From Amphiscolops sp. MND2022 (taxonomy: Eukaryota), in assembly GCA_964187785.1 (NCBI GenBank), contig OZ076420.1, positions 32,302,001 through 32,366,000 on the forward strand: a stretch of 64,000 nucleotides of DNA, given 5' to 3'. Made by a program: the position numbers and the translations under genes. Each line of letters begins with the position of its first letter. Position 1 is the stretch's first letter. The notes under the pieces were generated by a model. It saw only the letters and a program-made list of their open reading frames with translations. It was not told where the DNA came from and searched no databases. This document shows positions 10,120 through 57,440 of this stretch, piece after piece.

Positions 10120-10249
10120 TTATTTTCATTTCAACACCGTAGTGGTCAATGTTGTCCGGTATTATTCTGTTATTCTGTGTGATCTGGAGTATTCCTTCGG
10201 GATCGCTTTCTTCACTGTCTTCTTCGGAGGTCATATCTTCCAGATAGTT

Positions 10250-12255: not shown

Positions 12256-12875
12256 CTAAACTAGCCGAGTCACCGGAAATGGATGATGATTCACGAGAGA
12301 TGCTCTCATTCCTCTGGATTCTCCGATCTTGGTTGTTGGACTGCACTGCTCACGGAATACCCAAAGTGGTCTCGTCTGCCAACTTCAACCGAAAGATTTT
12401 CTGGCTGTTGGCTGTGATCATTTGCAGTGCTTGTTTCATCTACCAGATCGGCATAATGTTCCAAGACGTTTTCAGCTACCCCATAACTGTCAGTGTCCAA
12501 ATCAAGTATCCAGATAACCTCATAATGCCTACAGTTACAATTTGTAACTCCAATAAACTGAAAGAATCGAGCTTGAGAGAGTATGATAACAGAGCAGAGA
12601 CTCAGTTGCACAAAGTATTGTTGTTCGAAGACTTCACGTCAATCGGGATGAATGAAATTGAGAAAACATTGTATGAACAGCTTCAAAAATACCAAACGAA
12701 CACAACTACTAGAACAAAGGAGGGACGAACTCCCCAAGGAACGTCAAGCCAAAGCCCGGAAACTGAAGCCAATCCACCTCCACCACCTGACACCTATCAG
12801 ATCGATTGCAACGCTACGTACCCATATACTCTGAACTGGGACGATTCTAACAGTTTCAAATACCGCCCTGAATCG
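12256..12875 (+). CDS. DEG/ENaC exon: N-terminus, HG motif, TM1, start of ectodomain
   Basis: Acceptor tttcag|ct at 12255/12256; donor tcg|gtatcc at 12875/12876 (phase 0). Confidence 0.9.
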
Positions 12876-15800
12876 GTATCCTTTATCAATATATTTTCCT
12901 GGTATCTTATTTGCCCCAGTCACTTCAACACTGGTGTTTGTTCTGGTGTCGAAACTAATCAAGTATTCTTTCCTTTTTACTCGCACGCTTCTAAAAACAA
13001 AGCAGGAATAAAAGTTGCTGAGATTGAAAAATTTTAGTTTCAAACTTTCCATACGAAACTCAGGTCGTAAAATCAGTGTAAAATTGGTGTATCACCAAAA
13101 AGCCGTGTCTTACTTATTGCTGGTAGCTTATTGTGATCAAAAAGTTGCATTGTCTTCATTCTAAGCAATCAATTTTTTTATTAAAAACTTCAGCGCAATT
13201 GTTTAATAAAAAATGCTTTTCTTTATGATCAAGGAACACAATTTTTAGGTTATATACCATTAGAAACTACCTCAACTTTACATGAATTAAGAGATGGTTC
13301 CACCCAACTGCTTGCATGTAACTATGTCCACCAATACGATTCCATGAATTTAACCATGTTGTCAAATGAAATCAATTTTTTTGCGGTAGAGGATGAGTCA
13401 GCAGCTACTTGAACTTATCGCCTAAGAACCAGTTTCTAAAGTGAACAAGATCTAAAGCTAAATGCCTAGAATTTTTGGCAGCCTTCATTAATTTTAGCCA
13501 TCAGAAAGGAACATCTGCGAGTGACATCTGGCTGGTGACCGGATTTCTTTCATGTAGCAGGCTCATAACTGTTGTCCGTAGCTTCGTTGGCAGAATTATT
13601 TGATCGATAGTTTCTTCTTGTACGGCCGGTGATCCGATTTGTTATGTACAAAGTAAGTCATGTTGTTGCCTTTCCATGCACCCGAGTGTTTCCATTAGGA
13701 ATGAATGTGCCGTTGTCTCTGTCAATAGTAGTTCTAGATACATTGAGGAATTTTTCCCAGTTTCTTTGACTACTTTTCCCAAGTCCCAGTCTTTTCCTTG
13801 TTCCGCGTCAATTCGGGGTACGTGCCCGATTTTGATAAACTGGACCCTATTGAAGCGAATATTTTGTACCCAGTTTACAGTTGGCGTTTCTTGTCCTGAG
13901 TTGGTAACCCATGGTGGTGTTGATTGTTCGCAGATGGGTATCATGTAACGACCGTTGGGTGTTTGTTTTGTTTAAATGACATATTCTCCCAATTTCTGGG
14001 TTGCTGATTCGTTAATGTTTTAGCTAATGCAAGCGTTTGTTGGAAGTGAACTTGTGGTGTGGTTGATGACGTATACTGTTGATGACGTATTCTTAGTACT
14101 AGGCGTCATCCGTTTGCAACTACGCTGTCGGATTTCAGTTACGGATAATCCTGCGTGGTTGCTGGCTGCATGGGTACCGTTGACTGGAAAGTGTGTAAAC
14201 GATCGAATCATCTCCTTAAGATGTTTTTTTTTACATAACTTTTGTTTGAGTGTTGTTTCAAGTTCTTGGTGATCCGTTAAGAATTTCTTCGGTCTTCCTT
14301 GAATGTAAAACCGAAATGTTTTAATCCCCAATCTACTGCCAGTAGGTACATCTCGTCTGCTCCATTGTGTTTCTGTATCTCATGAAAATCGGATCAGGAA
14401 TTATGCTGATGTTAAGTTACCGTCTTGTTGTTCTTGCAGTAAAGTAGCCCCAGTCCTCTACTACTGACGTTTGTCGTTAAGATTTTCAGATAACTTGAGT
14501 TGTAGTAACCTAAATACCGTATTTCCGTGAGACTGGTTTTCTCATTTTCAAAGGCAATCGTATGTTCTTCCGTTCGCATCCGCCCGCTCAATATCATTTT
14601 TCGGAGCTGTATGAGGCTGTTCGTTAGGCTGATGAAATGTTAATATTTTTAGACAGATATCGTATTGCTAATAGGAAAGACTTTGGCTTGTTTTCGCTTT
14701 TTTAACCTGTGGAAGGTTTTTTTAATCGCGAAGACGTTATCTTTAAGCGGTTTAATGCCGTTCTGGTTTATTTTGCTAATGATTCTTCTGCACTGTATTG
14801 GCATGTTCAACAAAACATTAGCAAACAAGTGACCTAATACAGTCAAGAGTTATCGTGCTGTTGGCGCGAAACACTTCAACAGTGCTGATATGCCTTAGTT
14901 TTGCTCGCGGAAAGAAATACGAACAAGTACGTGTTATATTGTGCGATTCCTTGCGCTCATCCATTAGGAATTCATGCTACGATTATCATTTTCTGCGATG
15001 ATTGATGTGCAAAGTTTTTTGACACTGGAAGTTTAGTATTTCGCCCATTTCAGAAACAGGATGCTTCTGAGCGAGAACAAGGCCGTGGCATATGCCAAAC
15101 AGTTTTCTTTGTTGTTCTCAAGTCAACGTTTTTCTTCAAAACATTATTTGCCATTTTTCTGTACAATTTTTGTAAACTTAAAAGTAATTCCGGTTTTGCT
15201 TTATAGAGACAAGTTCAGGCACTATCTTATTAAATCTTTTCTTTGCGAAAAAGATATAATTGTCTTCTTTTACATTTTGCTGAATTTGGAATGTTGGATT
15301 ATGAAGAGGAACGTGCCGTTTGAGGCAATCTTCCTTGGTAGTCGCGGGAACGTTTAAAGTTGGGGTTCCACTTAAGGGTCGAAAAGCGTAGAAGTTTAAA
15401 AATATGGTCACAACTTTTTCAAATGAAAAACTTACAAAGAAGTGTCGAAACTTCCAAAGGGGGCTTTTCGCGCTCAAAAACGCTTTTGTAGTTTGGTTAT
15501 AGCATGCTGGGCCACATGGGAGCGGTTTTTGCGAACCTCGACCTACTGCTAAGGAAAGCGCAATTTAGTCAAGATATAACGTCAAAACTTGGATATAACG
15601 CACTATTATCAATCATCCACTTCCTCTTTATTGAAATGTTATATATTTCGGATATAAGATCAAAAGTTTGGATATCAAATGCAGAGACAAATCTCAGCGC
15701 TTGTTTTTAAACCTCCGCGTCCTCATTAGTAAACGCAGGATTGATCGGATTTAAGTCTAAAGTTCGGATGTAGCGCAATGTTTTCGAACAACTGCCTCCA

Positions 15801-18800
15801 AAGTCCGGATAGTGTTGAAAAAACTATCGGTGGATATAGTGAGAAAATCTAGAATCAGACACAAATTGATAGTTTGAAATAGTCGAATTGTGACAAAAAA
15901 TCGATAGTGGGCGCTTTAGTATCGTTCGCTTTTCTTAGTTGCTTTAAAACAGAAAAAAAAACGAAAAGAAAGACCCTTTGCCGTAACTTAGTGTAAGGAA
16001 TTTGGTCATTAGTGTCTCTAAAATCAAATGCGGAGAAAGAATTCTTCCTTGTTAATTTCCTTTTCAATCCACATGTTCCCTCGTTGCTATTCGGAATTTT
16101 GTTGGACGCTCCCGACTCAGTGTCCCTTTGTTCTGAAGACAGCGTACCCATTTTATTTTGTATTTCAGAAATACCTCTATTGCTAATAGCAGTGCTTATG
16201 GCCCTGTTGAACTGAGAGTGCATCATTGACGTCAAGTAACCCGATTCCTAGGAAAGTCTCATACTCATTTCATTTGAGAAGATTTCCTTCGATTCAATAC
16301 GTCTACCTTGTCTATGAAATTTTGCTTTCAACAATAAAATTCCTAGTTTCATTCATTTGTGACGAATTTTTTCTGTTATTGGAAAAAGCCTCAGTGTCGA
16401 TATGACTAACTGAGTCATTGATAGTATTAGGTAGTTATCGCTCAATAGGATTTGAGCTTTCGTCACCTAATTTTGCGTCCCTGTCTGCAAAGTCGGGTTA
16501 CAAATCCGTCTCTCTCGAGCTTCTTGCCTTTCCTTTCTGTTTTTTTAGTAGGAGGCATAAGAAAGTATCACATGGGAAGAATATAATCACATTTGCCTTG
16601 TAGATAACATAGTTTTACAGTTTTGTTGAATATCAGATTTTCAACTTCAGTTTTGTGTCGGGTACTACAAGTCCCGGGTAAAATACTCAAATTACAAAAG
16701 CACCCATACTTAAGAACATCATTACCCCATAACTAGGTGACGCTAATCTAAAAATAACACAATGACGACAATCCTGTTCTAGATATAGCCAGCAAAGGCC
16801 ATTTTTATTTTCCTTACAAGGCCGACTTCAGGCATATGAACATTTTATTAAAGATCATACGTGTTCAAATACAATTCACTGCGAGTGGCATGATGCCCTT
16901 CGTGTCCCCATATACTTTAGGCGCTTTTATTGCAAACATGCGGGTTGAAAAACAAACTAATGTTGAAATGAGAGCTCTACGGGATGGAAATATCAACTTC
17001 ATTGGTTAACAGTACAACAAAGAGTATTTATTTCCTATTAACTAAATATCCAACAGTACTGTTTTAATTTGGAGCGAACATCCCGTAATCGGTTGATTGA
17101 CTTAATTTTCGTCTCCGCATGGCACTTGGCCGTATACATATACTTAATCACAGCATTATTACTAAAAAATAGGCGCCTCCGATTAGTATATTGAAATTTG
17201 GACCAGTGGTCCACCACGCCATGCGAGAAGGCATTTGATTTCTTTTCCTTCTCGCTTGTACGCTTGGTGTCTAATATTAGCGCTACATATAACATTATAC
17301 ATACACTATACTACGGTATACTACGCTATACTACGCTATAGTATTATACATATTCAATAACATTGTCGATAAGTTACTGGAAAGAACATGGAAACAACAG
17401 CATATTATAAAAGGTTGAAAGTTGGTTATTCTCAACTTAACAGGATCGTTTTTGCAACGCTCTCTGGTAATCGTGGCTGAAGGAAGCTATGTTGCAATCT
17501 CAGGCAGCTGCTTCGGGCACTTTCCCAGGTGCTAAGATGAAGGAGCCAAACTTCATACCTTCGAGAAATGCTGGGTGCCTTGCTTTTAACTGCTCCGTAG
17601 ACTGGCCCCTCACGGCTCTTTGAGGACGTCCATAACTGCTTTGTCTTGCATTGGCTGGAGTGAGTTTCCACAGACAAGGCAATCGGTGCAGCCAGTGATG
17701 TACGTGCATTCCTTGACATCTGGTCTTTTGAATTGGGTTCAGACTAACTCTACCTCCTGAGTTGGCTGCCTTGAGTAGTTTGTCGGAGCATACGTTTCAT
17801 ATGTAGGGTACTTGTCCTCGAATTGTGGAGGCAAGTGTGTGTACACCAACGGGGTCAATTTTCCGCATAAGTTGTTGGGATGATTATTCCTCAAGCGCGT
17901 ACCTCTCTGGCGATAGAACTTCTGCGCCCCCGCTTGTCAAAAAAGGCTGGGGTAGACGAAGGCCCAGGATTAATGGAAGGCCTCGGGGCAACACTTATTT
18001 ACGGCTTAGCGTTCAACTTGTTAGCAGTCATTGTTGGTACGATTCTCCTAGTGAAAGTGATCACCATCTGTCTTTCCACACACTGAGTCAGCAATGCCAC
18101 GTCCTTTGATAGTTCTTTCACAGCTTCCACTGATGCATCGCTCGAGCATTCCATGGAGTCGTCTCTTGAAACGAGACTACACTGATGGGTCGTGTGGACC
18201 CATTGATAGACTCCATTTCAAAGTATAGGGAGAGAAACGTAAGCATCATAGCCATTTTGAAAGATTGATTGAGGTTTGTTTTAAGAGCTAGCGTTGAAGA
18301 CCAACAGTTTTGCATTAGATTAAAAAAAGATGTGATAAGGCATCTCACTTAAGTTTCGAAATGAATTCCTCCCAGCTAGTTTTGATTTTTCCCAGGCATT
18401 CCTCCCTTTGTTGATGAGAAATTGCTCAATACCATATTCATTCCTTGCTTTGATTAGAATCCGCCATCTTTTTTTTGGCTCTCAAATGCCTCAAAAGTAC
18501 TTGAGGCGGCGAAAAACCATCACTCAGTTGTTAAGTGTTTTCTACCCCTTCAACAGCCACTTGAAAGTCTCGAGATGTTGTGAAGAAGGTGGATGACAGC
18601 CGTATTCTTCCTTCACTCATAAGACAATAAGAATGTTGAAAAATTTTGGTTGATCATGCCATCGATCCATATAAGGAAACAATCAAAATAATGTGAAATT
18701 TTGAAAATATTGGAATACAAGAATAGGTTGTTATTTAAATGTATATAATGCAGATATTCCTGGCAGATGATCCACATGTCATTGATATCTTCATATAGCT

Positions 18801-21800
18801 ATAGTATTAGAAACCAATACAAATAGGCAGGTACTCCAATTTCCTTATTTTTGTCTCAACATTGTTAAATCGCCAGTTTGTCATCCAATTCCTTTTACAT
18901 ATTACCCCTTTTGCAGCTTCTAATATTTATCTTTTTGTAAATAATCACTTCTTTCTAACATCATTTAGTTTTCTAGTCTTTGCGTCATTGTCATTTTGTT
19001 ACTTTTGCTTTCAACGTTTAATGCATCATCATCTTCTCATCATCCCTTCTTGGATTGTCTTTCGGAAATCTCGTCCTCATCCCCAAGTCTAGCTCATCTC
19101 TGTCAACTTTCACCCTTACAATTTTCTCGTCAGTATAGTCTTCCTTTTGGAACAACGATACCCACCTAGTCCACACATTCCAACTCAACTGCCAGTTGTG
19201 ACTGAATCAACTTCGTTTTCACCAGCAGAATTCTGTCCAGTTGGACACCTCAGGTTTTTCTATCTCGTTGTGGTTTTGATTTTCGATTTTGCACGGGAAT
19301 AGGCTTGACCAGGGCTTTCGTCTTGTTCACGTATTTCTTTTCCTTTAAAACGCAAGTCTTCACAGGTGTTCTGTTTTATCTACTTTCGGAAGAGTTTGAA
19401 TCCGGCGTTTTGGATTTCTTTTCAGGAAGTTCAGCGCTAATTGATAACCTTGATGTTTAGCTATGTCAACAGGAAGGGATACATGTTTGCCTGAGAGTCT
19501 CTTCGCACATCTATCAGAAATAACGACCGTCAATCCTTTTACTGCCAGTAGAAACCGTCAATCCTTGCTACTGCTGCTCACTACAGAGGCATGTCTTCAC
19601 CCATTTGTTACTCCTCCAAGTCCTTCCACTGAGGAAAGCCTCAACGTCTACAGTGAATAAACTCTACTAAATTCCCACAGCTTCGGTATGAAACACTGCC
19701 ACTCCGCCTCCAACTGGTCCTGCTACCAGGTTTGTTCAAACCAGAGCGGAACCCGAAGTTTTCGGAGGGTCCATCATTGTCAATCAGACTGAGAGGCCAC
19801 TCTCGCTGAAGGCCAAGCATCACCGCAAGTTGCTTCTGATGTGATTAGTGAAGTTAGCGGTCAGTACCAGGGGGTCAACTAAGTGCCTACTGATTCACGT
19901 GAAGTTGAAGATCTGCTTGACAGCTCGGGGGTAGAGTACAAGTTTAATAGGCCTGTTACCCTCACATTGGACTCAGTTGTCTTACCGACCACCCAAAGGA
20001 ATCTGTACCCAGGTCAAGACATCAGTGATTGTGAATAGGGTGGAAATTTGCCACCGAGTACCAGTACTCCTCGTCAGGTATCTGCAACTTGTAGGGCCGT
20101 AATTCGGAAACGATTTTCCGAATATCCTTCAAAATCAGTACTCATCGGCCACTACACCGTCGCATTTAGTGAAGGCCAAATTCATCGCGTTTTCCGTGTC
20201 ACCTCAGATGAAACAGCTCTTTCATCTTTTCACCTGGTGAAAACATTGTTAGCAGGAGCACGTTCAGGTGGTGTTCCACTCGGGGAAGACCAATAATCCT
20301 GGTCTTCGTAGAACCCCTCAACCACGGTGTCCTCCTGAATGAAATATTTACGGTTGGTTGTCACAACGAGGGGTACACCAGTTGTGTCCTCAGTTCAGAT
20401 GAAGATCTAGCGGTCTTTGAATCGGCACAAGGATTTGTGTCGACTGCCGATACAGTCCCAACTTCCATCTCCACTGCAACAATTGCATCCGATATGCCTC
20501 TCGGTCTATCCGTCAACAGCATGCCGAGCTCGAGATACAGTGAAGCCGACTCTCAACCCCTAGCCCAGGAGTGCTAGCGCACTATTGTCAGTCCTACCAT
20601 CCCCCGCCCTCCTCGCAAACAAAGCAGACTCATGTGCAAACCCGGCAAAATGATTAAGAACCTCTTTGAAGGCAATGGCTGAACAAAAACTTTTGTGACA
20701 GATCACCTCGAACCAGAGCACAGCAAACATAAGTTTTACTGCCAAATTTGTGGAACAAATGTTTCAATCTTCTCAAAAGGCGCAAGAGAATTAGTCTGGC
20801 ACTACCAATTGGAATCTCATCTTCGCAAAGATCAACGTATGAGAGACGAGTACCCGGGGAAACTGACAAGATCACAGGGGTTACCAATCACTAAGTCCGC
20901 GGCAAAGACGATCACGTTTTAACTGCTTTTGAACTTAGGAGAGAAGTCTTTATTTGAGAATGCGCCATAAGTGGACATCGGGGACATGACTGTCTTTGGT
21001 GATTTTCGAATCCGACAGAGGTACGAGCAACGATAGCAGATCTCCATGATTGGCCTATTTGTTGTTCGCTGCGGGGACATTATACTGCTGCAGAATATGC
21101 GGGCCCAAGTCGGCATAACTGCCAATCACCAGGAAATTTTCTCCCCTTTTGACTGGAGCGCCACAACACATACATTAGGTATCTTGTTTCTAGTCAGAGC
21201 TCTCTCATGATCTATCATCATGTTATATTTTTTATCATTTGTTTCGTTTCACACCATCTTTCATAACATCTTCCTGTGCGGCATTGCAGACGTCGCGCAC
21301 CAGATCATATCATCCGAAATGTACTTTCTCGAGTTTGAACTAAAAGGCACCCACTGCTCAGTCTTCATCCGTTTTTGGAAAACAGATTTCTCGTCCTTGT
21401 TTACCTATGCTGTTACCGACAAGTACAGATTCTCCAGTTGGGATATTCAACTGGTCTCCCTCTGTGTTTGCCACCAAGACGAGTCTGGTTAGCGTGTCGG
21501 GGTGTCCGGCTGGATTATTAGCTCGCGTCGTGGAAAGATCCACTGTCTTCGGCCAGGTGTTCCAATCCCCCGTTAGCGTTCTGTTTTCGCCGAACTTGAT
21601 GCACCGACCACGAGGGAGCATGTTCGGGCTATTCGACTTCTTTTCTCAGTTGAATTTACTTGTCATTTTCCTCGATGGCTGTCAAAATCTGATTTGGATC
21701 GTTCAGACTCCTGAGCTTTCTCAAGTAGGTATTCCTTTCCTTCACAGGGCATCTTTCCCCATAGTCTGGATCTCACTTTCGGTTTTCGGCAAGCAGTCTG

Positions 21801-24800
21801 AACTTGAAACCTCCACTTGGCTCAATTCCAGCGATAGGTTCAGATCTTCTTGCGAAATGAAAGCCCATACTGGACTACATGGCCAAAACTGCCCCAACTC
21901 AACCAATGCAAGGTGTCCGAAATGAGAAAGGTATACTCCATTTCACCTTATTCCCTTTTGGCTTTTGCTTTGTACGACTGCCTCGAAAATCCTGTCAAAC
22001 AATTGTGTGTATGCTTTTGGCTTCAGCCTCAAAGTCGCGAGTGGCTCAATATAACGGACAACTTTCGTCTGTCAAACTGGAGTTCTTTGGCAGAATCCTC
22101 AGGGATTGTTAGTATATCAGTTGTTTTATGGTACATCCTGATACTTTCCACGCTGTCCTCTAATGTTCGTTCAGACCAAAGACTGTCCCTTTGTGATTGT
22201 CTGTGCATCACCCGTCTGCTGTTTAGATACAGATTCAAAAAATTTTGAAAAGAGTCTCTCATGACGTAAAGACTCTGAGTGCTTCATTTTGGGTAGTAAC
22301 ACCAGTTCATGAAAAAGCTATGTTATCTGTCTTTCCCGCCCCCGTATCTCCTTGGGAAATCCAATTGGTCGTCGCTGCTCGCAATAACAGGTCAGGAACT
22401 CCGACAGTTGTCATGTCGTGAATTGCTCTTTCAATTAAAGCTGATTTCGAATTTTAATGGGGTTTGTCGTTTCAGGATGGCGCTTGTCGCATCAAGGCTT
22501 AACGTGAAATATGCGACAAGAAGCCTCGCAGCATAAATATGGAGAGTCTGACTGATGCTGCCAAAGAAGTGATCACTTCGAAGGCTCGGTGCTACCTTGT
22601 CTCTCTTGTTGAGTCTCCTAAATGCCAACCTTTCCAGAATTGAGGCAAGTTTCGATCCAACTGACTTGTTGTTACCAGTTGACCAGGCCACCTTTTGTTT
22701 TACATCCCTGTTTCAGAGGTTCTACTTGCGAGGAAGGTTACCTCATTCGCCTGAGACAGAACTCTTGAATTCTTGGATCAGTTCCGCTGTTTCGCTGTAC
22801 ACATGAAAGCAACAGCATAATAAAGTTTGTAAGTTGTCGCAGCCTGCGCAGTGCTGCGTGACCCCAATGTAAATGTAAAAATGATGTTTGTAATGTAAAT
22901 GTTAAAATATTATTGAGAACTTAACGCAGTACCTAAAATACACAAAGATTTGAATACTCAAACAAAATTAAGTGCAGTGTTTGTTTGTAGTCAAGCAGGC
23001 AACGCGTTGACTGAAGTTAATTGTTTAATTTAGGGTGATTTGTTTGCCTAAACACATGAAGATAATAGAGCTAATACGTTATTTTATCTGCAATCGTTGT
23101 TTTGTTGCAGCTTAAATAAAGTAGGCTAATCGTTGCCTCTGAACACTTGGTTTGACGTCCCAGTCAACTATTTAGTTGCCCGAAACCAGAAGCATTGCCT
23201 GGAATGTGACCAGGATATTTTTACTACCAATGTTTGTAACGCTAATTACTCGCGTCCAATAATCGTTTTTAGTGCTCGAAAATTCTTCAATTCAATATTT
23301 AAGGCAGTTTATTCGAGTATGATTGAGAAATCCATTTTTCTTTGTTGTAAATATCATATTCTTTTCACGCTTCAGTAGCTAGGTTCATGATATTTAGTTC
23401 CACTTTCGGCGTATCGAATTGGCGCTGAAGAAAGAAAAAGGAATGCGGCATTGGGACTGCGACAGGAGGTAGACTCCCACTTTTCCTTAAAAGTGAAATG
23501 ACGCTGAACGGCAAGTCCAGAAGAAACCTCCGTTTTTTGGATTTCCTCGCCTCGCCTCGGTAGGACGCCGATTTGAACAAATTGGTGAATTCACGCACGG
23601 GGTTTATCCCGCGTGTCTTGCGTGAATTTAAAAAACCTGGAGCGTGATCGGAGAGGTCATTATTTTTGCACCCTAACTTGCGCAGTACTCTTTTTTAAGA
23701 AGTACTCTTTTCCATTTCTGAAATTGCAACTAGTAAATGTTCTCATTTTGGCAATCATGTATTTTCTCAAAAAACAGCACTTTGCAAAAGCCGGATTTGC
23801 TTCCAGCAGTTTAAAGGAAAATGTCGAATCTAATTGAATTACTGCCACCACAAAGATTGTTCGACTAAAGAGCATGCCCAAAAGGTCATTAAGGGGGAAA
23901 TTGGGAATTGACCCATCTAGCAATCAGGAAGCAAGCGTAGTCTTTAGCCCTTCAGTTGACGAAAATCAGTCTCTTTCTCAGCGTGATTTCGGCCTATCTT
24001 TCTAACAAAATCGAAATTGGAATATCCAAAAGCCTGATTTCGGACAACGAGAAATCTTAAGACTGATAGAGAATCTCTCGTTCAGAGTGTATAGTCTTTC
24101 AAACACTTGGTCTTAACAAGGTTGTCCGGTAGTAATTTGAGAGATCCCGAAGGAGTAACACCTGAGGAAGTCAAAAGAACAAACGTGACAAGAAACTTTA
24201 GTCTCAACATGGTGACAGGAGTTACAGCGAACCAACCCGGAAACAAACACCAAGGATCTTCCTTTCTGCCACCTCGAAACCAGAGGTACCCGGAAGATAT
24301 CAGCGATAAGCTCTTTTAATCGTTTCGAGCGGCAACACAACAGAAATCAGACGTCCCCTCGGGCGTCTCAAACAAAAGAGACACGTGGTGCTTGCCTCGA
24401 TGGACTTCCAGCAATTGTCAATGGACGTTCTCATCAACTTGGGAGCAATGGTTACTTGCATGCCAGAAACTGAATACATAAAGCTCATCCGATCCACCAA
24501 AGCTCATCCGGAACCGATCCACCAGGTTTCATACTGAAAGTCGCAAATGACGACATTGATAAGCCAATCAAAACAAAACGAAACATAGGTTCAGATCTTC
24601 TTGCGAAATGAAAGCCCATACTGGACTACATGGCCAAAACTGCCCCAACTCAACCAATGCAAGGTGTCCGAAATGAGAAAGGTATACTCCATTTCACCTT
24701 ATTCCCTTTTGGCTTTTGCTTTGTACGACTGCCTCGAAAATCCTGTCAAACAATTGTGTGTATGCTTTTGGCTTCAGCCTCAAAGTCGCGAGTGGCTCAA

Positions 24801-33800: not shown

Positions 33801-36800
33801 ACGAAACGGCATCGGAATCTTTATTAGTGACGGCACAAGAGATATTTTACAAATAACACACTAATACCAGATGACGTTTTCATCAGTTCGTCCAGAAATT
33901 ATGACGAAATGGGTAGCTGTTTTTTTAGCCCAGAGGACAGTTTGCTTAGAAGCAGCTCTTGATCGATTGGCTATTTTCCATGCAGCGATTTGTCGGCCGA
34001 CTCATCATGACTCCACTTTTCACTAGTGCAGTCTGTTTTCTGTCCGCCTATATCATCCCCTCACTGGCCAATTTTTCCGCTGCCTTTAGTGGACGACCCT
34101 CAAGAGAACTGGGGACTGTCGCAGTCCCCACAGTGCTGCGTGACTTTAAATGCATTGAGAACGCCTAACGAAGAAGGCTGAGAAATTGACCAGAGAGAGA
34201 CTGAGGAATCAACATCGAATCAAAAACAGAATTTGCCTACAAACAACGTTTATAATACTAAATACTCATGTAAAGGTTTGAATTATATTGAGAACTCAGC
34301 GCAGTACATAAAATACACAAGCATGTAAAAAATTAAACTTTTTCAAGTGCAGTGTTTGTTTGCAGTGAATCAGGTAACGCGTTGGCTGATTTCAATTCAG
34401 TTAGCGCGTTGATTGGAGCGCTGCCTTAACAATGGGATGAATTTCAAGCGTGTGGATATGGCCAAATTATTTGATCAATGCCGTCAATTAATTGAGAAGT
34501 CGTCCCAGGCAGCTTACTAGTCGCAGAAGCTGGGACAACCGCCTGGCTACTCGACTAGAATACTTTTTTGTATTGAAGCGTTCAACTGTTATCTAAAACC
34601 ACAAGTACGGAAATCTCGGCCTGAAAAAGGTCTAGTAGGACGTCCTAAACTTTAATAGTTTTGAAGTCTGAGTCAATAGCTGGGACAGCCTACCATTAAA
34701 CTTACAAGATTACAAGTGGTAAATGGGATAGTGTAGTTTAATTATTGTACTGAAGTAACAATTCACCCTATATAATCTGAGTCGACTGCCTGGCGACCTA
34801 CATGTAAATGTTGGAATACGATGTTATGAAGTTGAGTTGTTTGCCTAATCACATGATGAAATAAGTGCAAATACGCTATTTGATCTACAATTGTGTTTTT
34901 GTTGCAGTTTAAAAAAAGTAGGCACTTCGTTGCCTCTGATGACTTGGGTTCACGTCCAAGCCAACTATTTAGATGCCCGAAACCGGAAACTTTGCCTGGA
35001 GTGTGACCAGGAAATATTTTTGACTAACAATGTTTGAAACGCTAATTTTTCGTCCAATAATTGTTTGTAGTACAAGCTACATTTTTATTTTTAGTGCAGT
35101 TTATTCGAGTATTATCGAGAAATCTGTTTTTGTATAAATTTCATTTCTTTTTCCCGCTTCAGTAGCTAGGCTCATGAATTCCAGTGCCAATTTTGGTTTG
35201 GCGTCTCGAAATGGCGGGGAATGACGAAGAAAGGGACGCGGAATTGGGACTTCAACAGGAAGTTGATTCCCATTTTTCCTTAAATGTGAAACAAAGCTGA
35301 ACGTCGAGTCCCGAAGAAAGCTGCCTTCTTTGGATTTCCTCGCCTAGGTAGGACGCCGATTTGAACAAGGGGTGAATTCACGCAAGGGATTTATACCGCG
35401 TGTCTAGCGCAAAATATGAAGACCTGGAGCGGGATCGGAGATGTCATATTTCTTTCACCTCCGACGTCAACTTCAGCAGTACTCTTTTTTATGAAGAAGT
35501 CTTTCCGATTTTGAATTCGCAACTAGTGAATAATCACTTTTTGTTAATCATTTCAATTCCTATTTTTGTTTGTTTGTCGCCGCAATTAAGCCGCCCAATT
35601 GTTTTATCTTACAAAATCCAATAGTCAATAGACTGAATCGCTTCCAGTAGTTCAAAAGGACCTGTCAATTCTAATTGATTTATTGCCACGACAAAATTTT
35701 TTTCACTTAAGAACATGCCCAAAACGTCTCAAAAGAAGAAATTGAGAAGTGACCCATCTAGCAGTCAGGAAGAAAGCGTAATCTTTAGCCTATGAGTTGA
35801 CCAAACTCAGTGTCTTTCGGAGCGTGACTTCGAAGATGTTTCTAACGAGATGCAAAATCGAGTATCCCAAAGGCTAAGAGATATTGAGATCAGACAAAGA
35901 GAAATCTTAAGACTGATAGAAAATCTCTTTTCCAAATTGGATATTCTTTAAAACACTTCGTCTGAACAAGGTTGTCCGGCAGTAAGACTAGAACCTGAAG
36001 AAGTAACACAAGAGGAACTCGAAAGAACCGACATGACCAGAAACGTTAGTCTCAACATAAGTAGTTGAATAATGTCATTTTAACGAGATCGTATTTGGCA
36101 ACGCTCTTTGGTAAATGTCGCTGATCGAATATATGTTGCCATCGCAGGCGTCCGCCTGGGACACTTAGACGCGTTTCTGCTGGCCTGACTTGGCCCGTCC
36201 CGTATGTTAGTAGTTTTAGTAGTTTCTGTAAAAAGTGTCAACTACGCATATATTCTGTTATCTGACGGAATGAACTAGCCACTAAAGTATGCCGACCAAA
36301 AACAGTTGCTAAATCAGTTCTATCTCTGGAATGGACCGCCCCTGAGCCTCAGTACACAACATCATCGACGAAATCTTCAGATGACTTTTTTCTAACTTGA
36401 AAGTGACCTAGTTTGCATCAATTTTTTTCCGAAGTTTTATGATTCAGTGATATTTTGTATTTCAAATCATTCTTTTCTCAGGTTTATGTGGCTTGTGACT
36501 CGTATTCTTGCATCCCCATCAGGTACATGTGTGACAATTACTATGACTGCCCCATAGACTATTCCGTTTATTATGAAAACCCTGATGACTTGCGACCTTA
36601 CGATGAATCGGTTGAGCTCTGTGGAGTATGCCCATTCACCATGTTTCAATGTGATGACGGATCATGCATCGAACCCTTCCTAAGGTAATCTTCGTTCTCT
36701 AAACTCAATGCAACAGTGGTGGTTTGATTTTGCTAAAAAAACGAACAGTCAAATTGGGATGAGCCTTATACAATTAGTAAATATCAATTCAAATCGAAAC

Positions 36801-39800: not shown

Positions 39801-42800
39801 AAAACAAGAAAGTTAGTCTCACTCTCTGTTTTTTTGTAGACAGCTGTTTTTTGTTAAATTCTACACACAGCTGTTCCAAAGTATTTCTTGATACTAAAGT
39901 CGAGAGATGTTTCTTTTTTTTAAAAAAAATCAAATCATCATGAGAGAATGTTTTGCTAGGTGCAACTCAAAATTCGACTGTCCAGACGGATCTGACGAGG
40001 ATGAGAATTTTTGTGATCCCCTCTTGACGCAAGATGAATTCGTATGCTGCACAATCAACAAGAAGATCCCCTTGAGCAAAGTTTGCGACAAGTATGACGA
40101 CTGTGCAAGAGATAAATCCGATCAAGTTTTGGAGTCTTGTAGGAACCAGATGGGAGGAGAGCTCTACTGTTTTATGCCTTACGGGGGTGAGAGTCTGTAT
40201 ATGCGAGAAATCTTGGGAGTCACAGAGAGTCAGCTGAATGACGGCAATATAGACTGTATGTTCGCTGCTGACGAAACTTGCGTTTGGAAAAGTTCCACAA
40301 AACCATGGCAGCATCCTTACAAAGGTGGAGATTTTTCTGAATACTTCAAATTTCTAGAGCTTTTGGCCACCAAACCTGCATCTTCCCGATGGTACACAAT
40401 GGCTACTAGAGAAGAAATCTATCAATTGGGTCATGATATTGAAGTAAGGAACGTTCACCTCTTTTTTCATGCCATTTTCGTTCGCAAAAAAATTGGAAAC
40501 CTTACTTTGGTGCAGTTTTTCAACTGCATTTTCGAACTTCAATTGAATTTACTGATTCAACTGAACTGAACAAAAAGATAAGTGGTTTCAAATGGAACAT
40601 ACGTTAGAAGTTTGATATAACGTTCAAGCGTGATATAAATCGATTATGAAAAGCATAACTCCGTGATAGACAACTTTCTGTTTCTATGTCTTGCCAAGCA
40701 AAAGACGGGGACTCAAGGATAATTAACGTTGAACTTTCAACTCGATTTGTTTTTCAATTTTTAAGGAGAGGAACAATCGAAATTCGGTGGTGTTTGTTTC
40801 CAAAACTTTCTACAGTAGTCAGTTTCGGGATCGCTCCAATAGTTAAAAATGTCCGTGTAACTCAGATGCTCGGTCCTAGTCACTCCTAGAACCCAGGCAG
40901 AAATCGGTGGGTTCAGTTCCTCCTGCCAAATCTAAAATTGTCATCATTTTTTAACAGGATAACTGTGCTGTTGTTTTACCGGTGGGTCATTTGAGAGCTC
41001 AGCAAAAGCTAGTCGGAAAGTAGCCTAGAAATGGTTTTCAAAAAGTCAGAGGTTGTCCAGCATTTCAACGCGAAGTATTTAGAAGTTGTTCAAGTTCTTT
41101 CCGTTCAAGTTGTGAAACTGATTGACCAGAGAGTTTGCGAAGAAAAAGTAAACTTACCCGTTAAACGAAAAAAATATGTTTTTCAAATTTCAATCACTAA
41201 TGTTTCTGTCGCAAGATCTCTTGCAGAGATAGATATGGACTCCGACAATTCAAGAAGGGGAAAAGTGCCACCGTACATTGCTTTTTTCTGAATGACACGA
41301 ATGAGTACTTTTTGAATTCAAAGAGGGTGGTTGTTCGCCAATTATCGCTTAGTAAGATAGAAAATGGTTGTGCAAATGCCCCGGTAGCGGACCCTTACTA
41401 CCATACTCTGACTACTACTACTAAGAATGTGAAAAGGTTTCATCGGCAAACAAAATTTTTGTTGATGGAACTTTCTCGTTATATAATCCAGCAAACATGA
41501 TTCTAAAAAACGATCTTAATGGTGAAGATGCGTTCGCAATTTCATATTGGTTTAAGTTTGCTCAGTTCCTCGTTAGTTCCTTTTGATAAGTTGAAAGTTT
41601 CAATTTGATGAGTCATCATGGTTCGTTCTTTCATAGTGTTCCCTGGTGATTTTTTGACGATTTTTCTTCTCTTCAGATAATTACGGTTTCTTTGCAACAC
41701 TTTTACGCTCATTTTGATTACTTTACAGTTTTTGAGGTACCTAAATGAGTATTTTCTCCAGGACGCTTTCTTTTGGGGCGAAATGTGGCAATGATTGTAA
41801 TTTATATAGAAATAGTCATTAGCTAGATGCGACAATGTGTCGAAAAGTGTGCACAGAAAGTTCTCTGCTAGTTTCTAATTCTGTGAAGTTGTCTTGGAAA
41901 ATCTTTAAAGGGCATTCAACAATTTATCAACAACAAAAGCTTGAAAATGGCCAAGGAAAAGTTAATTGGGCCCCAAGTTGGGCTTCATTCTCAGCAGAGG
42001 GAGGAGTTATCCTTATTGGGACGTTTTTTTGCAGTACTATATGCACCGTTTTTGATTTTGTTGTTTCAATTAGAAGCAATCTTATCTGAAAGAGCAAAAT
42101 CTGGTAAGCAAAATCTTTGTTTCGTAGCTGCCCTTATTGTCTTAACATCTTACTAAATCAACGTTGAATAAGCTACCTTGGACACATTCATCAACCTTGT
42201 CATCGGGGTTTGTTTATCTGATACTGGTTTTTTCAGGACATGGTGGTGACATGCGTGAATAACAACAAAGTCTGTAACGAGAGTCTTCAGATTGAGGAAG
42301 TTTTGTCTCAAGCTTACGGGAAATGTTTCTCATTCATTCAAAACTCGACAGTCGTGGCCAGTGGACCAGCGTATGGTCTTCAACTTCTATTCAACCTGGA
42401 AATCAATGAAAACATGGGTCTCTTCTCACCTCGCAGTGGCTTGAAACTCTACTTGACACCCCCTGGCTTATTTGGAGCAGCCGAAGACTTGTACGTCAAC
42501 TGGGACTCAGAGATCAACTTGACTCCCGGATCCGAGCATTCGATATCTGTGCACCCGAAAAAAGTCACCAAGTTGGGTCTACCTTACAGTGACTGTGAGA
42601 TTTACACAAATGGCCGACTCGAAGTCTATAATTCCCAGAGAGAGTGTCAAAAAATATGTTTACTCAAGTAGGTGCCTAACGAAGTGTTTCACAGAACTCG
42701 AAGTGTTTTTTTTTCAGAAGTTAGAAATTAGGGGGGTCAGTAGGGGGGTCAAGAATGACAAGTGAAGCCTGCCAGCATTCGACGCAATATTCAACACCTG

Positions 42801-44002
42801 TTTCAACATTGTCAACATAATTACTGGCCAATATGCTGGTTGAGTCATTTTTGAATCGGCGAGCCGAATCGGCCACAATAAATATAAACATCTACCTCAT
42901 TGAATTTTAATCAAGAACGCAAGCTTAAGGCAAAAATTTCAAAACGATTGCGGCAAATTCCGCTGAAATTGACTGAAATTCATTCTTCAAGGTTTGTTAT
43001 TTTACCAAAATCCACGGACGCTAAAGTTGCTGCCAAACTCATTGATTCCTGCTCATGTACTTTGCAATGTACAACCTAGAAAAGAGTTTCTATCAGTTGA
43101 TTTCACCGTAAAATAAACTAAATTCGGAACTGCGACGATGATTAAGTGCTCATTTTGGTATTGATTAATGAAGATTTCTTCTTTTTTATTATAATCCAAA
43201 ATTGAGTTGAAAATCTTAAAAAATTCCAACTTTTCTTATCTAAAAACATTTTTTTATTTTTTCAGTTATTGTATTTAAGTAATGTTATTTCATTTCTAGT
43301 CGACAATTTGAGGAATGTCAATGTGTGGATGACATTTTCATGAAAGGAGCCCCATTGTGCTCATTGGACCAAACAGAAGCTCGAGGTTGCGTGGATCAAC
43401 TGAAAAACTTGTTCAACCCCAACCTAGATTGTGACTGTCCAAACGACTGCAACAGTTTAACTTATGACGTCACAATAACAAAACTCGAATGGCCGACTAA
43501 ACGCTCGTTTCCTCAATTTGTCATGTCTGTTCACAAATCACTGAGAAGTAACATTTCGCAAGTCTTTCTTCTGGAAACATTGTCCAAATATAAATATGAA
43601 GACCCGTTTATGGATAACTCTGACCATGCTGCTTTGGCACTTTGGTCAGTCCAGTCAACATTCGGGCGATTTTCGGTTTACTTCTCCGACCTTTCGATGA
43701 CAGTGATTGACGAAAGACCAGTGTACAATTTTGTGATGGTCATTTCGAACTTTGGAGGGCTTCTCGGCCTATATCTGGGAATCAGTGTACTCACTGTTTT
43801 GGAAATCCTTGAATTTGGTTTTGACTTCATCGAGTATGTCAATTTGCAGGGAAAACAAGCCGGAATTCGAAAAATTGCACAGCAACCTCCAGTACTATGC
43901 GACCCAGAAGGTGGAATGTCTTTGGATTTTTCGGCTGATCAATATCTGAAGAAGAAAGACAGCATCACGAAAACGGGAGATGACACACTTCAGGAAAAAT
44001 GA
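12256..44002 (+). CDS. DEG/ENaC (ASC family) ion channel subunit with LDLa-like repeats in the ectodomain; spliced model join(12256..12875,36482..36684,39960..40443,42237..42667,43300..44002)
   Basis: GT-AG introns with compatible phases 0,2,0,2; 2418 nt from ATG 12279 = 805 aa + stop. Motifs: pre-TM1 HG (CTAHGIPKV), TM1, PTVTICNSN, LGHDIEDMVVTC, YGKCFSF, GLKLYL, Cys-rich thumb (CQKIC..ECQC..CDCPNDC), VYF, TM2 SNFGGLLGLYLGISVLTVLE with a G-x-S filter. An upstream exon is probably missing from the model. Confidence 0.93.
13280..14850 (-). mobile_element. Ty3/gypsy pol fragment (RT-RH junction to integrase N-terminus), heavily decayed
   Basis: SKINQNGIKPLKDNVFAIKK (RT/RH tether), LTTNVSSRGLG (RH DAS..GLG-like), LTDHQELE, IILPTKLRTTVMSLLH (pre-integrase zinc finger). 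No LTR found. Confidence 0.7.
15992..17287 (-). mobile_element. Long LTR with a decayed MPPTKKQK-type ORF (probable 3' LTR of the element to its right)
   Basis: Minus strand ends ...CCTTACA at 15992 with no PBS. ORF from ATG 16558 (frameshift in an A7 run) resembles the ORFs at 4418 and 58797. CCAAT motif at 17001-17015. The start at 17287 (TGTAGCGCT) is tentative. Confidence 0.6.
17306..17340. repeat. 10-bp minisatellite (ctatactacg) about 3.5 copies
   Basis: ctatactacggtatactacgctatactacgctata. Confidence 0.7.
20521..22806 (+). pseudogene. Decayed zinc-finger (BED-like) protein, possibly hAT-transposase-derived
   Basis: FYCQICGTNVSIFSKGARELVWHYQLESH (C-x2-C...H-x5-H), then fragments YFLEFELKGTHCSVFIRFW, SLVSVSGCP, LMHR and C-terminal LLLPVDQATFCFTSL. 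Confidence 0.5.
21834..27257. repeat. Tandem segmental duplication, period 2751 bp
   Basis: 21834-24506 matches 24585-27257 with only about 7 substitutions seen by eye; the ORF track is duplicated at an offset of 2751. Confidence 0.97.
22835..24584 (+). mobile_element. Duplicated 5' LTR (22835-24209), PBS and start of gag/protease of the TAAGT element
   Basis: TAAGT then TGTCGCAG...GTCTCAACA, then PBS TGGTGACAGG at 24210; degenerate protease VLINLGAMVTCMP. Confidence 0.9.
26960..29340 (+). pseudogene. pol: gag-pol remnants (gag largely deleted; PR, RT, RNase H, integrase zinc finger)
   Basis: YYGIITTL and KLDCSQA (RT), PVVILTDNKSVTRF and NTAADFLS (RH), YPGMAARIAHYITRCTDC (IN HHCC); many frameshifts. 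Confidence 0.85.
29708..33200 (-). pseudogene. Antisense accessory ORF(s) inside the LTR element, decayed; not env-like
   Basis: Chain of minus-strand fragments (32973-33200, 31837-32079, 31193-31459, 30741-31088, 30520-30765, 30208-30513, 29708-30295) between integrase and the 3' LTR. No signal peptide or TM helix recognised. Confidence 0.55.
33608..33855 (+). pseudogene. Decayed sense accessory ORF just upstream of the 3' LTR
   Basis: MSSLDFNRSSDCFILDCDQDTYLS...IIEDVYEVIETESEPVIL, with internal stops; divergent from the antisense ORF starting at about 33200. Confidence 0.35.
36482..36684 (+). CDS. DEG/ENaC exon: rest of LDLa-like repeat 1 and first half of repeat 2
   Basis: tttctcag|gtt acceptor; VYVACDSYSCIPIRYMCDNYYDCP...DESVELCGVCPFTMFQCDDGSCIEPFL; donor ag|gtaatc (phase 2). 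Confidence 0.92.
37945..38630 (+). repeat. Dispersed repeat, copy A (inverted copy at 50673-51360); unclassified, probably transposon-derived
   Basis: Shared blocks ggaggcaaaatgga, tgggcgcctgtcccg, cagggtgac, aataagatctaaa, aaaaagactcat, aagtacctgccaatttc, aaacagcgaaaa. Confidence 0.75.
39960..40443 (+). CDS. DEG/ENaC exon: end of LDLa repeat 2, degenerate repeats 3-4, return to the finger/palm
   Basis: ttttgctag|g acceptor; CNSKFDCPDGSDEDENFC, EFVC..IPLSKVCDKYDDC..SDQ..C, LNDGNIDCMFAADETC, ATREEIYQLGHDIE; donor gaa|gtaagg. Confidence 0.92.
40960..41830 (-). mobile_element. Possible decayed CACTA/EnSpm-like DDE transposase remnant
   Basis: Fragments ILFADETF..SSSSQSM and QFHNL...MLDNL*LFENH loosely resemble the NxDG..SS and H..LDNFSAFPFEN motifs of that superfamily; many stops. 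Confidence 0.28.
42237..42667 (+). CDS. DEG/ENaC exon: palm/beta-ball and start of thumb
   Basis: ttttttcag|gac acceptor; DMVVTC..YGKCFSF..GPAYGLQLLFN..GLKLYL..PYSDC..ECQKICLL; donor aa|gtaggt (phase 2). Confidence 0.93.
43300..44002 (+). CDS. DEG/ENaC last exon: thumb, TM2, C-terminal tail
   Basis: atttctag|t acceptor; RQFEECQCV..CDCPNDC..VYFSDLS..SNFGGLLGLYLGISVLTVLE; TGA at 44000-44002. Confidence 0.94.
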
Positions 44003-54300: not shown

Positions 54301-54368
54301 GCGGAAAATTTAAAGATAGTCAAGGCTGATTGTAATCGTGGCTAAATACGGATATTGTCCCTAATAGT

Positions 54369-56841: not shown

Positions 56842-57440
56842 CTAAATCGTTCGAACCCCAGCAATTGGACGATGATTCGCGAGAGATGTTCTCATTTCTC
56901 TGGATTCTCCGATCTTGGTTGTTGGACTGCACTGCTCACGGAATACCCAAAGTGGTCTCGTATGCCAACTTCAATCGAAAGATTTTCTGGCTGTTGGCTG
57001 TGGTCATTTGCAGCGCTTGTTTCATCTACCAGATCGGCATAATGTTCCAAGACGTTTTCAGCTACCCCATAACTGTCAGTGTCCAAATCAAGTATCCAGA
57101 TAACCTGATAATGCCTACAGTTACAATTTGTAACTCCAATAAATTGAAGAATTCGCTCCTTCGAGAATATGACCAAAAAAAGGATACACAATTACACAAA
57201 ATTTAGCTATTTGAAGACTTTACGTCTATCGGCATGGATGAAATAGAAAAAGAAATGAAGCAAAATCTTCATGGGAATCCCATTATGGTACGGGTTGTTG
57301 AATATGTTAGCGAGGATTATGAATATTACTACAGTGGATATCAAAATGGAGATTCTAGTGGGTCTACTTTTTGTCGAGCTGAAAATCCTTTTATTCCGAG
57401 CTGGGAAGACCTTTTAGGTTTCAACGAGCGACCCTATAGG
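56842..57440 (+). pseudogene. First seen exon of a tandem DEG/ENaC paralog, with an in-frame TAG
   Basis: Same acceptor context (ttttcag|ctaaa), HG motif, TM1 and PTVTICNSN. TAG at 57204-57206 replaces TTG of copy 1 and the frame continues. Phase-0 donor agg|gttagt at the homologous RP.. position. Later exons are not found in the window. Confidence 0.85.

What the first reader, a model, noticed from the sequence alone, without database searches (positions are those of the whole stretch)
12256..44002. DEG/ENaC channel with an array of LDLa repeats inserted in the finger region
Seen: between PTVTICNSN and LGHDIEDMVVTC the spliced protein has one canonical LDLa (CPFTMFQCDDGSCIEPFLRCNSKFDCPDGSDEDENFC) and three divergent ones (CNATY..CDSYSCIPIRYMCDNYYDCP..DESVELC; EFVC..IPLSKVCDKYDDC..SDQ..C; LNDGNIDCMFAADETC). 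Established: the finger is the variable gating region of DEG/ENaCs (ENaC GRIP domain, ASIC acidic pocket, FaNaC peptide site). LDLa modules are Ca2+-binding ligand-recognition units (LDLR, RXFP1), and C. elegans EGAS channels are a precedent for added extracellular modules (EGF). Inference: a channel gated or modulated by a protein/peptide ligand or by extracellular Ca2+. I could not check whether this architecture is already described in other invertebrates, so novelty is unverified.
Basis: partly seen in the sequence, partly recalled or inferred. Interest (0 to 1): 0.82.

Follow-up and report, generated by a model that had tools for sequence, protein, structure and literature searches.

The report
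Sodium-channel gene with LDL-receptor modules
This is an apparently intact gene for a DEG/ENaC-type sodium channel subunit carrying LDL-receptor-type binding modules in its outer "finger"; the design is real, but the same untested design already sits in public protein sets of acorn worms, echinoderms and acoel worms.

Summary
A clean five-exon gene (12279-44002, + strand, all GT-AG, 805 aa) encodes a DEG/ENaC subunit. It has the HG motif, two membrane segments and a GIS filter. About 290 residues are inserted between the two halves of the ASC domain.

The insert holds one canonical LDLa module with an intact Ca2+ cage, two degenerate LDLa-derived modules and one remnant that no profile recognises.

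Exon 3 carries LDLa and channel sequence in a single open frame, so the fusion does not depend on splicing. Synonymous sites are saturated and replacement sites are not among four paralogs of this genome. A second haplotype differs at 6 silent and 2 conservative sites.

No RNA data exist; the only public runs are DNA.

The architecture is not unique. 48 of 71 relatives of one acorn-worm channel carry LDLa, and all 207 LDLa modules in 40 full-length homologs lie at this same site. An acoel gene encodes ASC-LDLa-CUB-ASC in one intronless frame.

I found no paper describing the class, so its function is unknown. My best guess is a Ca2+-stabilised binding appendage on the gating finger.

The scan had already noted similar genes elsewhere in this genome. 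The neighbouring copy is a pseudogene.

The parts
12279..12875 (+). Coding exon 1 (aa 1-199): N-terminus, HG motif (aa 25-26), TM1, beta1 (PTVTICNSN), first finger helices, Thr/Ser/Pro-rich linker and Cys177. Phase-0 donor GTATCC.
   Evidence: Pfam ASC 83.4 bits, profile positions 5-128. Model and splice sites. Matches to ASIC5, alpha-ENaC and FaNaC1 chains at E about 1e-9. The donor position is shared with copy 2.
12876..36481 (+). Intron 1 (23.6 kb). No other LDLa- or ASC-like exon and no recognisable host gene. Contains repeats 100% identical at 2751-nt spacing (21834-22133 = 24585-24884; 23785-23991 = 26536-26742).
   Evidence: tblastn and motif scans; ORF list and Pfam scan of the large ORFs; repeats.
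36482..36684 (+). Exon 2 (aa 200-267, ends in phase 2): divergent LDLa module 1 (36494-36622, with a 14-residue insertion in the Ca2+ loop) and the N-terminal half of canonical module 2 (from 36629).
   Evidence: Pfam Ldl_recept_a 30.5 bits in two stretches. Local LDLa model gives 18.4 bits for module 1. Homologous exons in paralogs L001 and L009 have the same phases.
39960..40443 (+). Exon 3 (aa 267-428), one open frame holding: the C-terminal half of LDLa module 2 (to 40014, DCPDGSDE cage), degenerate module 3 (40030-40140), an 8-Cys region with the module 4 remnant (40168-40281), and the return into the ASC fold (...RWYTMA...LGHDIE).
   Evidence: Alignment of three paralogs has 63 invariant columns including all Cys. 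pN 0.23-0.35 against pS 0.71-0.95 among four paralogs. Second haplotype at 39999-40098 has 6 synonymous and 2 conservative changes.
42237..42667 (+). Exon 4 (aa 429-572): DMVVTC... and the middle part of the ASC ectodomain (Pfam profile 151-304).
   Evidence: Pfam ASC 44.7 bits, profile positions 151-304. Aligns to human alpha-ENaC residues 280-397.
43300..44002 (+). Exon 5 (aa 572-805): last third of the ASC domain (Cys-rich CDCPNDC region), TM2 with the GIS filter (aa 732-734), C-terminus and TGA stop.
   Evidence: Pfam ASC 97.9 bits, profile positions 309-455. Matches to FaNaC1, ENaC and ASIC1 chains at E 1e-8 to 1e-7. Motif positions.
56865..57461 (+). Exon 1 of the tandem copy 2, a pseudogene. 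ATG is changed to TTG and there is an in-frame TAG at 57204-57206. Its other exons lie beyond the window (L009 coordinate + 62609 = window coordinate).
   Evidence: L010 is 100% identical to window 52951-64000. In L009 exon 4 is absent and exon 5 has a deletion of about 36 nt with a frame change.

Best explanation
SHOWN: this is an intact-looking gene for a divergent DEG/ENaC channel subunit of 805 aa. Its finger region, between the N-terminal and C-terminal halves of the ASC domain, carries a disulfide-rich insert of about 290 residues with 20 Cys. The insert consists of a Thr/Ser/Pro-rich linker, one canonical Ca2+-cage LDLa module, two degenerate LDLa-derived modules and a conserved 8-Cys region. 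The gene belongs to a family of at least four paralogs in this genome, one of them a dead neighbour. It also belongs to a much wider and unstudied class of DEG/ENaCs that carry LDLa, CUB, Kringle, PAN, discoidin and other binding modules at this same site in hemichordates, echinoderms, amphioxus and acoels.

INFERRED: the modules form a Ca2+-stabilised protein-binding appendage on the outer top of the channel. It would hold an extracellular partner, either a basic ligand or a matrix tether. Because it is wired into the finger, the element that tunes gating in ENaC, ASIC and FaNaC, partner binding or pull would modulate or trigger opening. Ca2+ is structural here, not the signal.
For: Gene model: five exons, all GT-AG, in frame.

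Channel hallmarks: Pfam ASC on exons 1, 4 and 5 at 83, 45 and 98 bits. HG at aa 25-26, GIS at aa 732-734 and two hydrophobic segments.

Fusion independent of splicing: exon 3 holds the LDLa half, modules 3-4 and ASC sequence in one frame.

Selective constraint: pN 0.23-0.35 against pS 0.71-0.95 for exon 3 among four paralogs. The allelic bubble has 6 synonymous and 2 conservative changes. All Cys and the DGSDE cage are invariant in three aligned paralogs, and copy 2 also keeps DGSDE.

Exon 1 to exon 2 link: compatible phases, no other candidate exon, and the same order in the duplicated copy 2, where the intron is 11.2 kb.

Wider class: 48 of 71 relatives of a Saccoglossus channel carry PF00057. 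ASC is split at profile position ~128 in most of those scanned (98-139; P0025 reported only from 224), with LDLa, CUB or Kringle in the gap. 207 of 207 LDLa modules in 40 homologs lie between the two ASC halves. Symsagittifera XP_063721483.1 is an intronless ASC-LDLa-CUB-ASC frame.

Binding role: it rests on the established function of LDLa, Kringle, CUB and discoidin modules, and on the fact that different binding modules occupy the same site.
Against: There is no transcript evidence. The only public runs holding the locus are DNA. Skipping exons 2 and 3 together would stay in frame, so an isoform without LDLa is not excluded.

Only one of the four proposed modules passes the LDLa threshold. 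Module 1 has a 14-residue insertion in its Ca2+ loop and module 3 lacks Cys3, so classic ligand binding may be limited to module 2.

AF2 on exon 3 failed (pLDDT 39), so there is no structural support.

No partner, current or expression site is known. The only studied module-bearing relatives, C. elegans EGAS-1 to -4, gave no currents in oocytes (PMC10424705).
Confidence: 0.55

Rival explanations
1. The insert is a structural or biogenesis element. It would serve folding, ER quality control, subunit assembly, glycan or mucin-like shielding, or spacing of the ectodomain. It would have no ligand and no direct part in gating.
For: Three of the four modules are degenerate. A Thr/Ser/Pro-rich linker precedes them. 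Insert length and module content vary widely between homologs, from 148 to 1122 residues, as expected for a tolerant surface loop.
Against: Replacement changes are strongly constrained in exon 3. The Ca2+ cage of module 2 is invariant in four paralogs. The modules recruited at this site in other phyla are all known binding modules.
Confidence: 0.2
2. The LDLa module makes the channel a sensor of extracellular Ca2+. Ca2+ occupancy of the cage would set the conformation of the finger.
For: Module 2 keeps the cage residues N/D...D...D-E. Some DEG/ENaCs are Ca2+-modulated; TadNaC6 is an example, going by a paper title listed.
Against: From my own knowledge, LDLa Ca2+ sites bind in the micromolar range and would be saturated in sea water or body fluid. 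Homologs carry non-Ca2+ modules (Kringle, PAN, fn3) at the same place.
Confidence: 0.07
3. The model is not what is expressed. Either the LDLa exons are skipped (exon 1 joined to exon 4 stays in frame) or the locus is silent and on its way to becoming a pseudogene like its neighbour.
For: There are no RNA data. The tandem copy 2 is dead. A related contig from another sample has frameshifts in its exon 3 homolog. No annotated full-length protein of this lineage exists in the protein collections.
Against: All five exons are open with canonical sites. The allelic differences are mostly silent. Skipping exons 2-3 would also remove conserved ASC-side sequence (...RWYTMA...LGH) that is invariant in three paralogs.
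Confidence: 0.12

Closest known systems
Predicted LDLa-bearing DEG/ENaCs of Ambulacraria. Examples: Saccoglossus kowalevskii LOC100372922 (P0101, 9 LDLa stretches), Anneissia japonica 'degenerin mec-10-like' (P0025) and Acanthaster planci 'LDL receptor-related protein-like' (P0172).
   Same: ASC split at the same place (Pfam profile position ~128), with LDLa modules in the gap. These proteins are also functionally uncharacterised.
   Different: Only 23-29% identity in the ASC part. They form a separate, well-supported clade (99 SH-aLRT). Their modules are canonical and numerous, often with Kringle, CUB, PAN, F5/8C, SRCR or TSP1. Here there is one canonical module plus degenerate ones.
Acoel Symsagittifera roscoffensis XP_063721483.1 (P0079) and relatives: ASC-LDLa-CUB-ASC
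   Same: LDLa in the finger gap. The closest named relative of the window's exon 5 is also from an acoel: Convolutriloba macropyga, 51% identity over a short stretch.
   Different: That gene is intronless and carries a CUB domain. It sits in a different clade of the tree (100 SH-aLRT). The window gene has five exons and no CUB.
C. elegans EGAS-1 to EGAS-4 (EGF plus ASC domain channels)
   Same: DEG/ENaC subunits with an added extracellular protein module, and function still unknown (PMC10424705).
   Different: The added module is EGF, not LDLa. I did not check the position of EGF in those proteins here.
ENaC finger / GRIP domain (human alpha-ENaC, PDB 6WTH)
   Same: The insert occupies the interval between residues that align to alpha-ENaC ~170 and ~280. 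From my own knowledge this is the finger/GRIP region, where proteolysis relieves inhibition.
   Different: No RxxR (furin-type) motif occurs anywhere in the protein. The inserted sequence is LDLa-derived, not GRIP-like.
LDLa modules of LDLR/LRP, of RXFP1 and of type II transmembrane serine proteases
   Same: Module 2 has six Cys at canonical spacing and the acidic Ca2+ cage.
   Different: The host protein is an ion channel. The neighbouring modules have lost or moved Cys residues.

Membership tests
DEG/ENaC superfamily (Pfam ASC, PF00858) | ASC profile match above the curated cut-off of 23.6 bits | tested here: met
   Exons 1, 4 and 5 score 83.4, 44.7 and 97.9 bits and cover profile positions 5-128, 151-304 and 309-455.
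DEG/ENaC superfamily (Pfam ASC, PF00858) | Two membrane segments flanking a large Cys-rich ectodomain, a pre-TM1 His-Gly motif and a G/S-x-S filter in TM2 | tested here: met
   Hydrophobic peaks at about aa 36-60 and 720-750, HG at 25-26, GIS at 732-734 and 38 Cys.
DEG/ENaC superfamily (Pfam ASC, PF00858) | Trimeric, amiloride-sensitive, Na+-selective channel activity | not testable with these tools
   Requires expression and electrophysiology.
LDL-receptor class A module (PF00057) | Profile match above the cut-off of 24.1 bits | tested here: met
   Met for module 2: 37.3 bits with Pfam and 35.7 bits with the local model. The verdict for the other three modules is given in the next row.
LDL-receptor class A module (PF00057) | Profile match above cut-off for the three 'divergent' repeats | tested here: not met
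   Module 1 scores 18.4 bits on part of the profile. Module 3 scores 14.7 and 12.5 bits. Module 4 scores -0.9 bits. Homology of modules 1 and 3 remains plausible: module 1 is near-canonical in paralog L001.
LDL-receptor class A module (PF00057) | Six Cys at canonical spacing and the acidic Ca2+ cage (D/N-x3-D-x-x-D-x-x-D-E) | tested here: met
   Met for module 2 only. The CNSKFDCPDGSDE-type motif keeps DGSDE invariant in four paralogs. Module 3 lacks Cys3 and has an extra adjacent Cys. Module 1 has an insertion in the loop.
LDL-receptor class A module (PF00057) | LDLa fold | tested here: inconclusive
   AF2 on exon 3 with a three-sequence alignment gave mean pLDDT 39.1, which is unusable.
ASIC, ENaC or FaNaC subfamilies | Clear phylogenetic nesting within, or closest similarity to, one characterised subfamily | tested here: not met
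   The gene is about equally distant from FaNaC1, ENaC, ASIC1 and ASIC5 chains (E 1e-9 to 1e-7). In the tree it is a long branch next to two spider ASIC-like proteins (96 SH-aLRT in a quick search). No reference sequences of the named families were in the tree.

The most novel reading that the evidence does not exclude
DEG/ENaCs with binding modules in the finger could be one old bilaterian subfamily shared by acoels, ambulacrarians and this lineage. The AU test does not reject a single clade of all LDLa-bearing channels (p = 0.115). They would work as receptor-channels or tethered mechanosensors that open when an extracellular protein binds to or pulls on the finger. That gating mode has not been described for this superfamily.
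Probability: 0.15. Interest if true: 0.8.

Novelty: new member of a known kind. Interest (0 to 1): 0.42.

Why it matters
The finger is where proteases, protons, peptides and toxins act on ENaC, ASIC and FaNaC. A large, conserved and wholly untested class of channels carries ready-made protein-binding modules at exactly that spot, which suggests a route to protein-gated or matrix-tethered DEG/ENaCs. This gene is a compact member of the class (one good LDLa module, 805 aa) and could serve as a test case. On its own it is not a new architecture.

Tried and rejected
RNA evidence. Both run searches returned only four runs from one sample. Laying them on 36400-42399 showed even depth over introns, so they are DNA.

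Cross-species orthologs. I first read contig L001 as an ortholog from another species. This was wrong. The ENA assembly ERZ25074608 is the window's own genome, 100% identical over 11,050 nt. L001, L005/L006 and L009 are therefore paralogs.

Full-length annotated ortholog. None was found. The best matches to exon 5 are single-exon fragments of 257 aa or less. A profile search using a scaffold plus the exon pieces returned only echinoderm and hemichordate proteins.

Structure. AF2 on exon 3 gave pLDDT 39, so I ran no fold search. The spliced protein has no reference id, so it could not be folded or searched as a whole.

Independent origin of the insert. The tree needs at least 3 changes of the LDLa label. 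However, the AU test does not reject a single LDLa clade (p = 0.115). I therefore claim neither one gain nor several.

Literature. Eight searches pairing ENaC, degenerin, ASC or PF00858 with LDLa, LDL receptor, Kringle, CUB, PF00057 or EGAS found no description of LDLa-bearing DEG/ENaCs. A look inside the eLife 2023 ASIC phylogeny paper also found nothing.

Other genes in intron 1. I looked for one that might own exons 2-3 and found none.
Full report
**Observation.** I built a five-exon model:
- exon 1: 12279-12875
- exon 2: 36482-36684
- exon 3: 39960-40443
- exon 4: 42237-42667
- exon 5: 43300-44002

Every intron is GT-AG, the frame is continuous and the product is 805 aa. The ATG is at 12279, not 12256.

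**Channel part.** Pfam ASC matches exons 1, 4 and 5 at 83.4, 44.7 and 97.9 bits, covering profile positions 5-128, 151-304 and 309-455. The protein has the following features:
- HG at aa 25-26
- hydrophobic segments at about aa 36-60 and 720-750
- a GIS filter at aa 732-734
- 38 Cys, of which 20 lie in the insert

Against solved structures it is about equally far from FaNaC1, ENaC, ASIC1 and ASIC5, with E-values of 1e-9 to 1e-7. I therefore do not assign it to any named subfamily. Exon 1 aligns to human alpha-ENaC up to residue ~170, and exon 4 aligns from ~280. The insert thus occupies the finger interval. From my own knowledge this is where ENaC carries its GRIP domain.

**LDLa part.**
- Module 2 is split by the phase-2 intron between exons 2 and 3. 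It is canonical, at 37.3 bits with Pfam and 35.7 bits with a local model built from 109 modules of the homologs.
- Module 1 matches only profile positions 5-27 (18.4 bits) and has a 14-residue insertion in its Ca2+ loop. In paralog L001 the same module is near-canonical.
- Module 3 is sub-threshold (14.7 and 12.5 bits). It lacks Cys3 and has an extra adjacent Cys.
- Module 4 is not recognised (-0.9 bits), although it aligns to the cage half of the profile.

So the 'array' is one good module, two degenerate ones and a remnant.

**Is the fusion real?** Four lines of evidence support it.
- Exon 3 is one open frame. It contains the C-terminal half of module 2, modules 3-4, and the conserved segment that leads back into the ASC fold (...RWYTMA...LGHDIE). 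The link between LDLa and channel therefore does not depend on any splice prediction.
- Among four paralogs of this genome, exon 3 has pN 0.23-0.35 against pS 0.71-0.95. All Cys are invariant in the three that I aligned.
- The DNA runs show a second haplotype across 39969-40128 with eight differences. Six are synonymous and two are conservative (Q>E, K>Q).
- The link from exon 1 to exon 2 across the 23.6-kb intron has three supports. The phases match (0/0). No other ASC- or LDLa-like exon lies in between. The duplicated neighbour keeps the same order, with exon 1, then an 11.2-kb intron, then exons 2-5.

One thing cannot be shown. There is no RNA. Only four runs of one sample hold the locus, and their even depth over introns shows that they are DNA. 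Skipping exons 2 and 3 together would stay in frame, so an isoform without LDLa cannot be excluded.

**A correction made during the work.** I first took the ENA contigs as another species. The ENA assembly ERZ25074608 is in fact the window's own genome: L010 is 100% identical to window 52951-64000. This changes how the contigs are read.
- L001 has exons 2'-5' intact. It is 56.7% identical to the window protein over 559 aligned positions, with identical intron positions and phases.
- L005/L006 carry exons 3-5 of another copy.
- L009 is also from this genome and continues the window beyond its end.

All of these are paralogs, not orthologs. This agrees with unchecked notes of this scan on other LDLa-bearing DEG/ENaC genes in the same genome.

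L009 shows that copy 2, whose exon 1 is at 56865-57461, is a pseudogene:
- its start codon is changed from ATG to TTG
- it has an in-frame TAG at 57204
- exon 4 is missing
- exon 5 has a deletion of about 36 nt with a frame change

**How common is the design?** Among the best 150 library matches to exon 5, many full-length proteins carry LDLa.
- Pfam shows ASC broken at profile position ~128 in most of those scanned, with LDLa (up to 9 stretches), CUB or Kringle in the gap.
- 48 of 71 relatives of one Saccoglossus protein carry PF00057, often together with Kringle, CUB, PAN, F5/8C, SRCR, TSP1 or fn3. They come from three hemichordates, five echinoderms and, without LDLa, amphioxus.
- In 40 full-length homologs, all 207 LDLa modules lie between the two ASC halves.
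- The acoel Symsagittifera roscoffensis has an intronless 880-aa frame reading ASC-LDLa-CUB-ASC. This proves the design without any gene modelling.
- The closest named relative of the window's exon 5 is from the acoel Convolutriloba macropyga, at 51% over a short stretch. The host may therefore be an acoel, but I could not establish this.

**Phylogeny.** On the ASC parts alone (80 rows, 434 columns, quick IQ-TREE), the window gene and L001 form a long branch next to two spider ASIC-like proteins that lack LDLa (96 SH-aLRT). The ambulacrarian LDLa clade (99) and the acoel LDLa+CUB clade (100) are separate. The LDLa label needs at least three changes on this tree. An AU test nevertheless does not reject a single clade of all LDLa-bearing rows (p = 0.115). 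Whether the insert arose once or several times stays open.

**Mechanism.** The following are shown: an intact subunit, a constrained disulfide-rich insert in the finger, and one Ca2+-cage module that is invariant across paralogs.

The rest is inferred. LDLa, Kringle, CUB, discoidin and PAN are all protein-binding modules, and different lineages place them at the same site. The common denominator is therefore binding of an extracellular partner. Because the finger tunes gating in the studied families, that binding could act as a ligand or as a tether. Ca2+ is most likely structural. I put this reading at about 0.55, counting both the identity of the gene and the mechanism. The rivals are a purely structural or biogenesis role (0.2), a model that is not expressed as drawn (0.12) and Ca2+ sensing (0.07).

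**Novelty.** Eight full-text searches and one paper read found no description of LDLa-bearing DEG/ENaCs. The only discussed precedent for added modules is EGAS in C. elegans. EGAS means 'EGF plus ASC', and the four proteins gave no currents in oocytes (PMC10424705). The architecture is nonetheless plainly present in RefSeq and UniRef. This gene is therefore a new, divergent member of a class that databases hold and nobody has studied. It is not a new kind of protein.

Noticed in passing
window 56865-57461, continued in L009 (L009 coordinate + 62609 = window coordinate): exon 2 at L009 5969-6181, exon 3 at about 8294-8782, exon 5 at 9805-10336: The tandem copy 2 of the channel gene is a pseudogene. 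Its ATG is changed to TTG, it has an in-frame TAG at 57204, exon 4 is absent and exon 5 has a deletion of about 36 nt with a frame change. Its LDLa exons 2 and 3 are still open.
   Followed up: yes
window 12250-12549 versus 56836-57135: The 5' part of exon 1 is 93% identical between the live copy and the dead copy, while the rest of exon 1 and the other exons are only about 70-77% identical. Similarity begins exactly at a shared TTTCAG just upstream of the ATG, which suggests an upstream non-coding exon.
   Followed up: partly
window 37800-38800 (intron 2): A very high-copy repeat. Summed contig depth in the DNA runs is 1e5 to 7e5, against 15-90 in the flanks, with many internal-deletion joints.
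   Followed up: no
window 21834-26742 (intron 1): Repeats 100% identical at 2751-nt spacing (21834-22133 = 24585-24884; 23785-23991 = 26536-26742). This is either a very recent tandem duplication or an assembly artefact.
   Followed up: no
window 62488-62895 (+): An ORF with Pfam DUF1759 (46.5 bits). From my own knowledge this domain is typical of the gag region of BEL/Pao-type retroelements.
   Followed up: no
window 52951-64000 = L010 9161-20210 (reverse strand): The public ENA 'metagenome' assembly ERZ25074608 contains this same genome at 100% identity. Its contigs (about 87-114x by their names) can be used to walk beyond the window.
   Followed up: yes
L004 736-1462 (ENA ERZ26859043): A related gene in another sample has its exon 3 homolog spread over three reading frames (two frameshifts) and has lost Cys5 of module 3. 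It is probably another decaying copy.
   Followed up: partly
L008 (Convolutriloba macropyga OZ077307.1): The region homologous to exon 5 is split into at least three pieces over about 11 kb. RefSeq models only a 110-aa fragment there (XP_075253526.1), so genes of this lineage appear to be under-annotated in acoel genomes.
   Followed up: no
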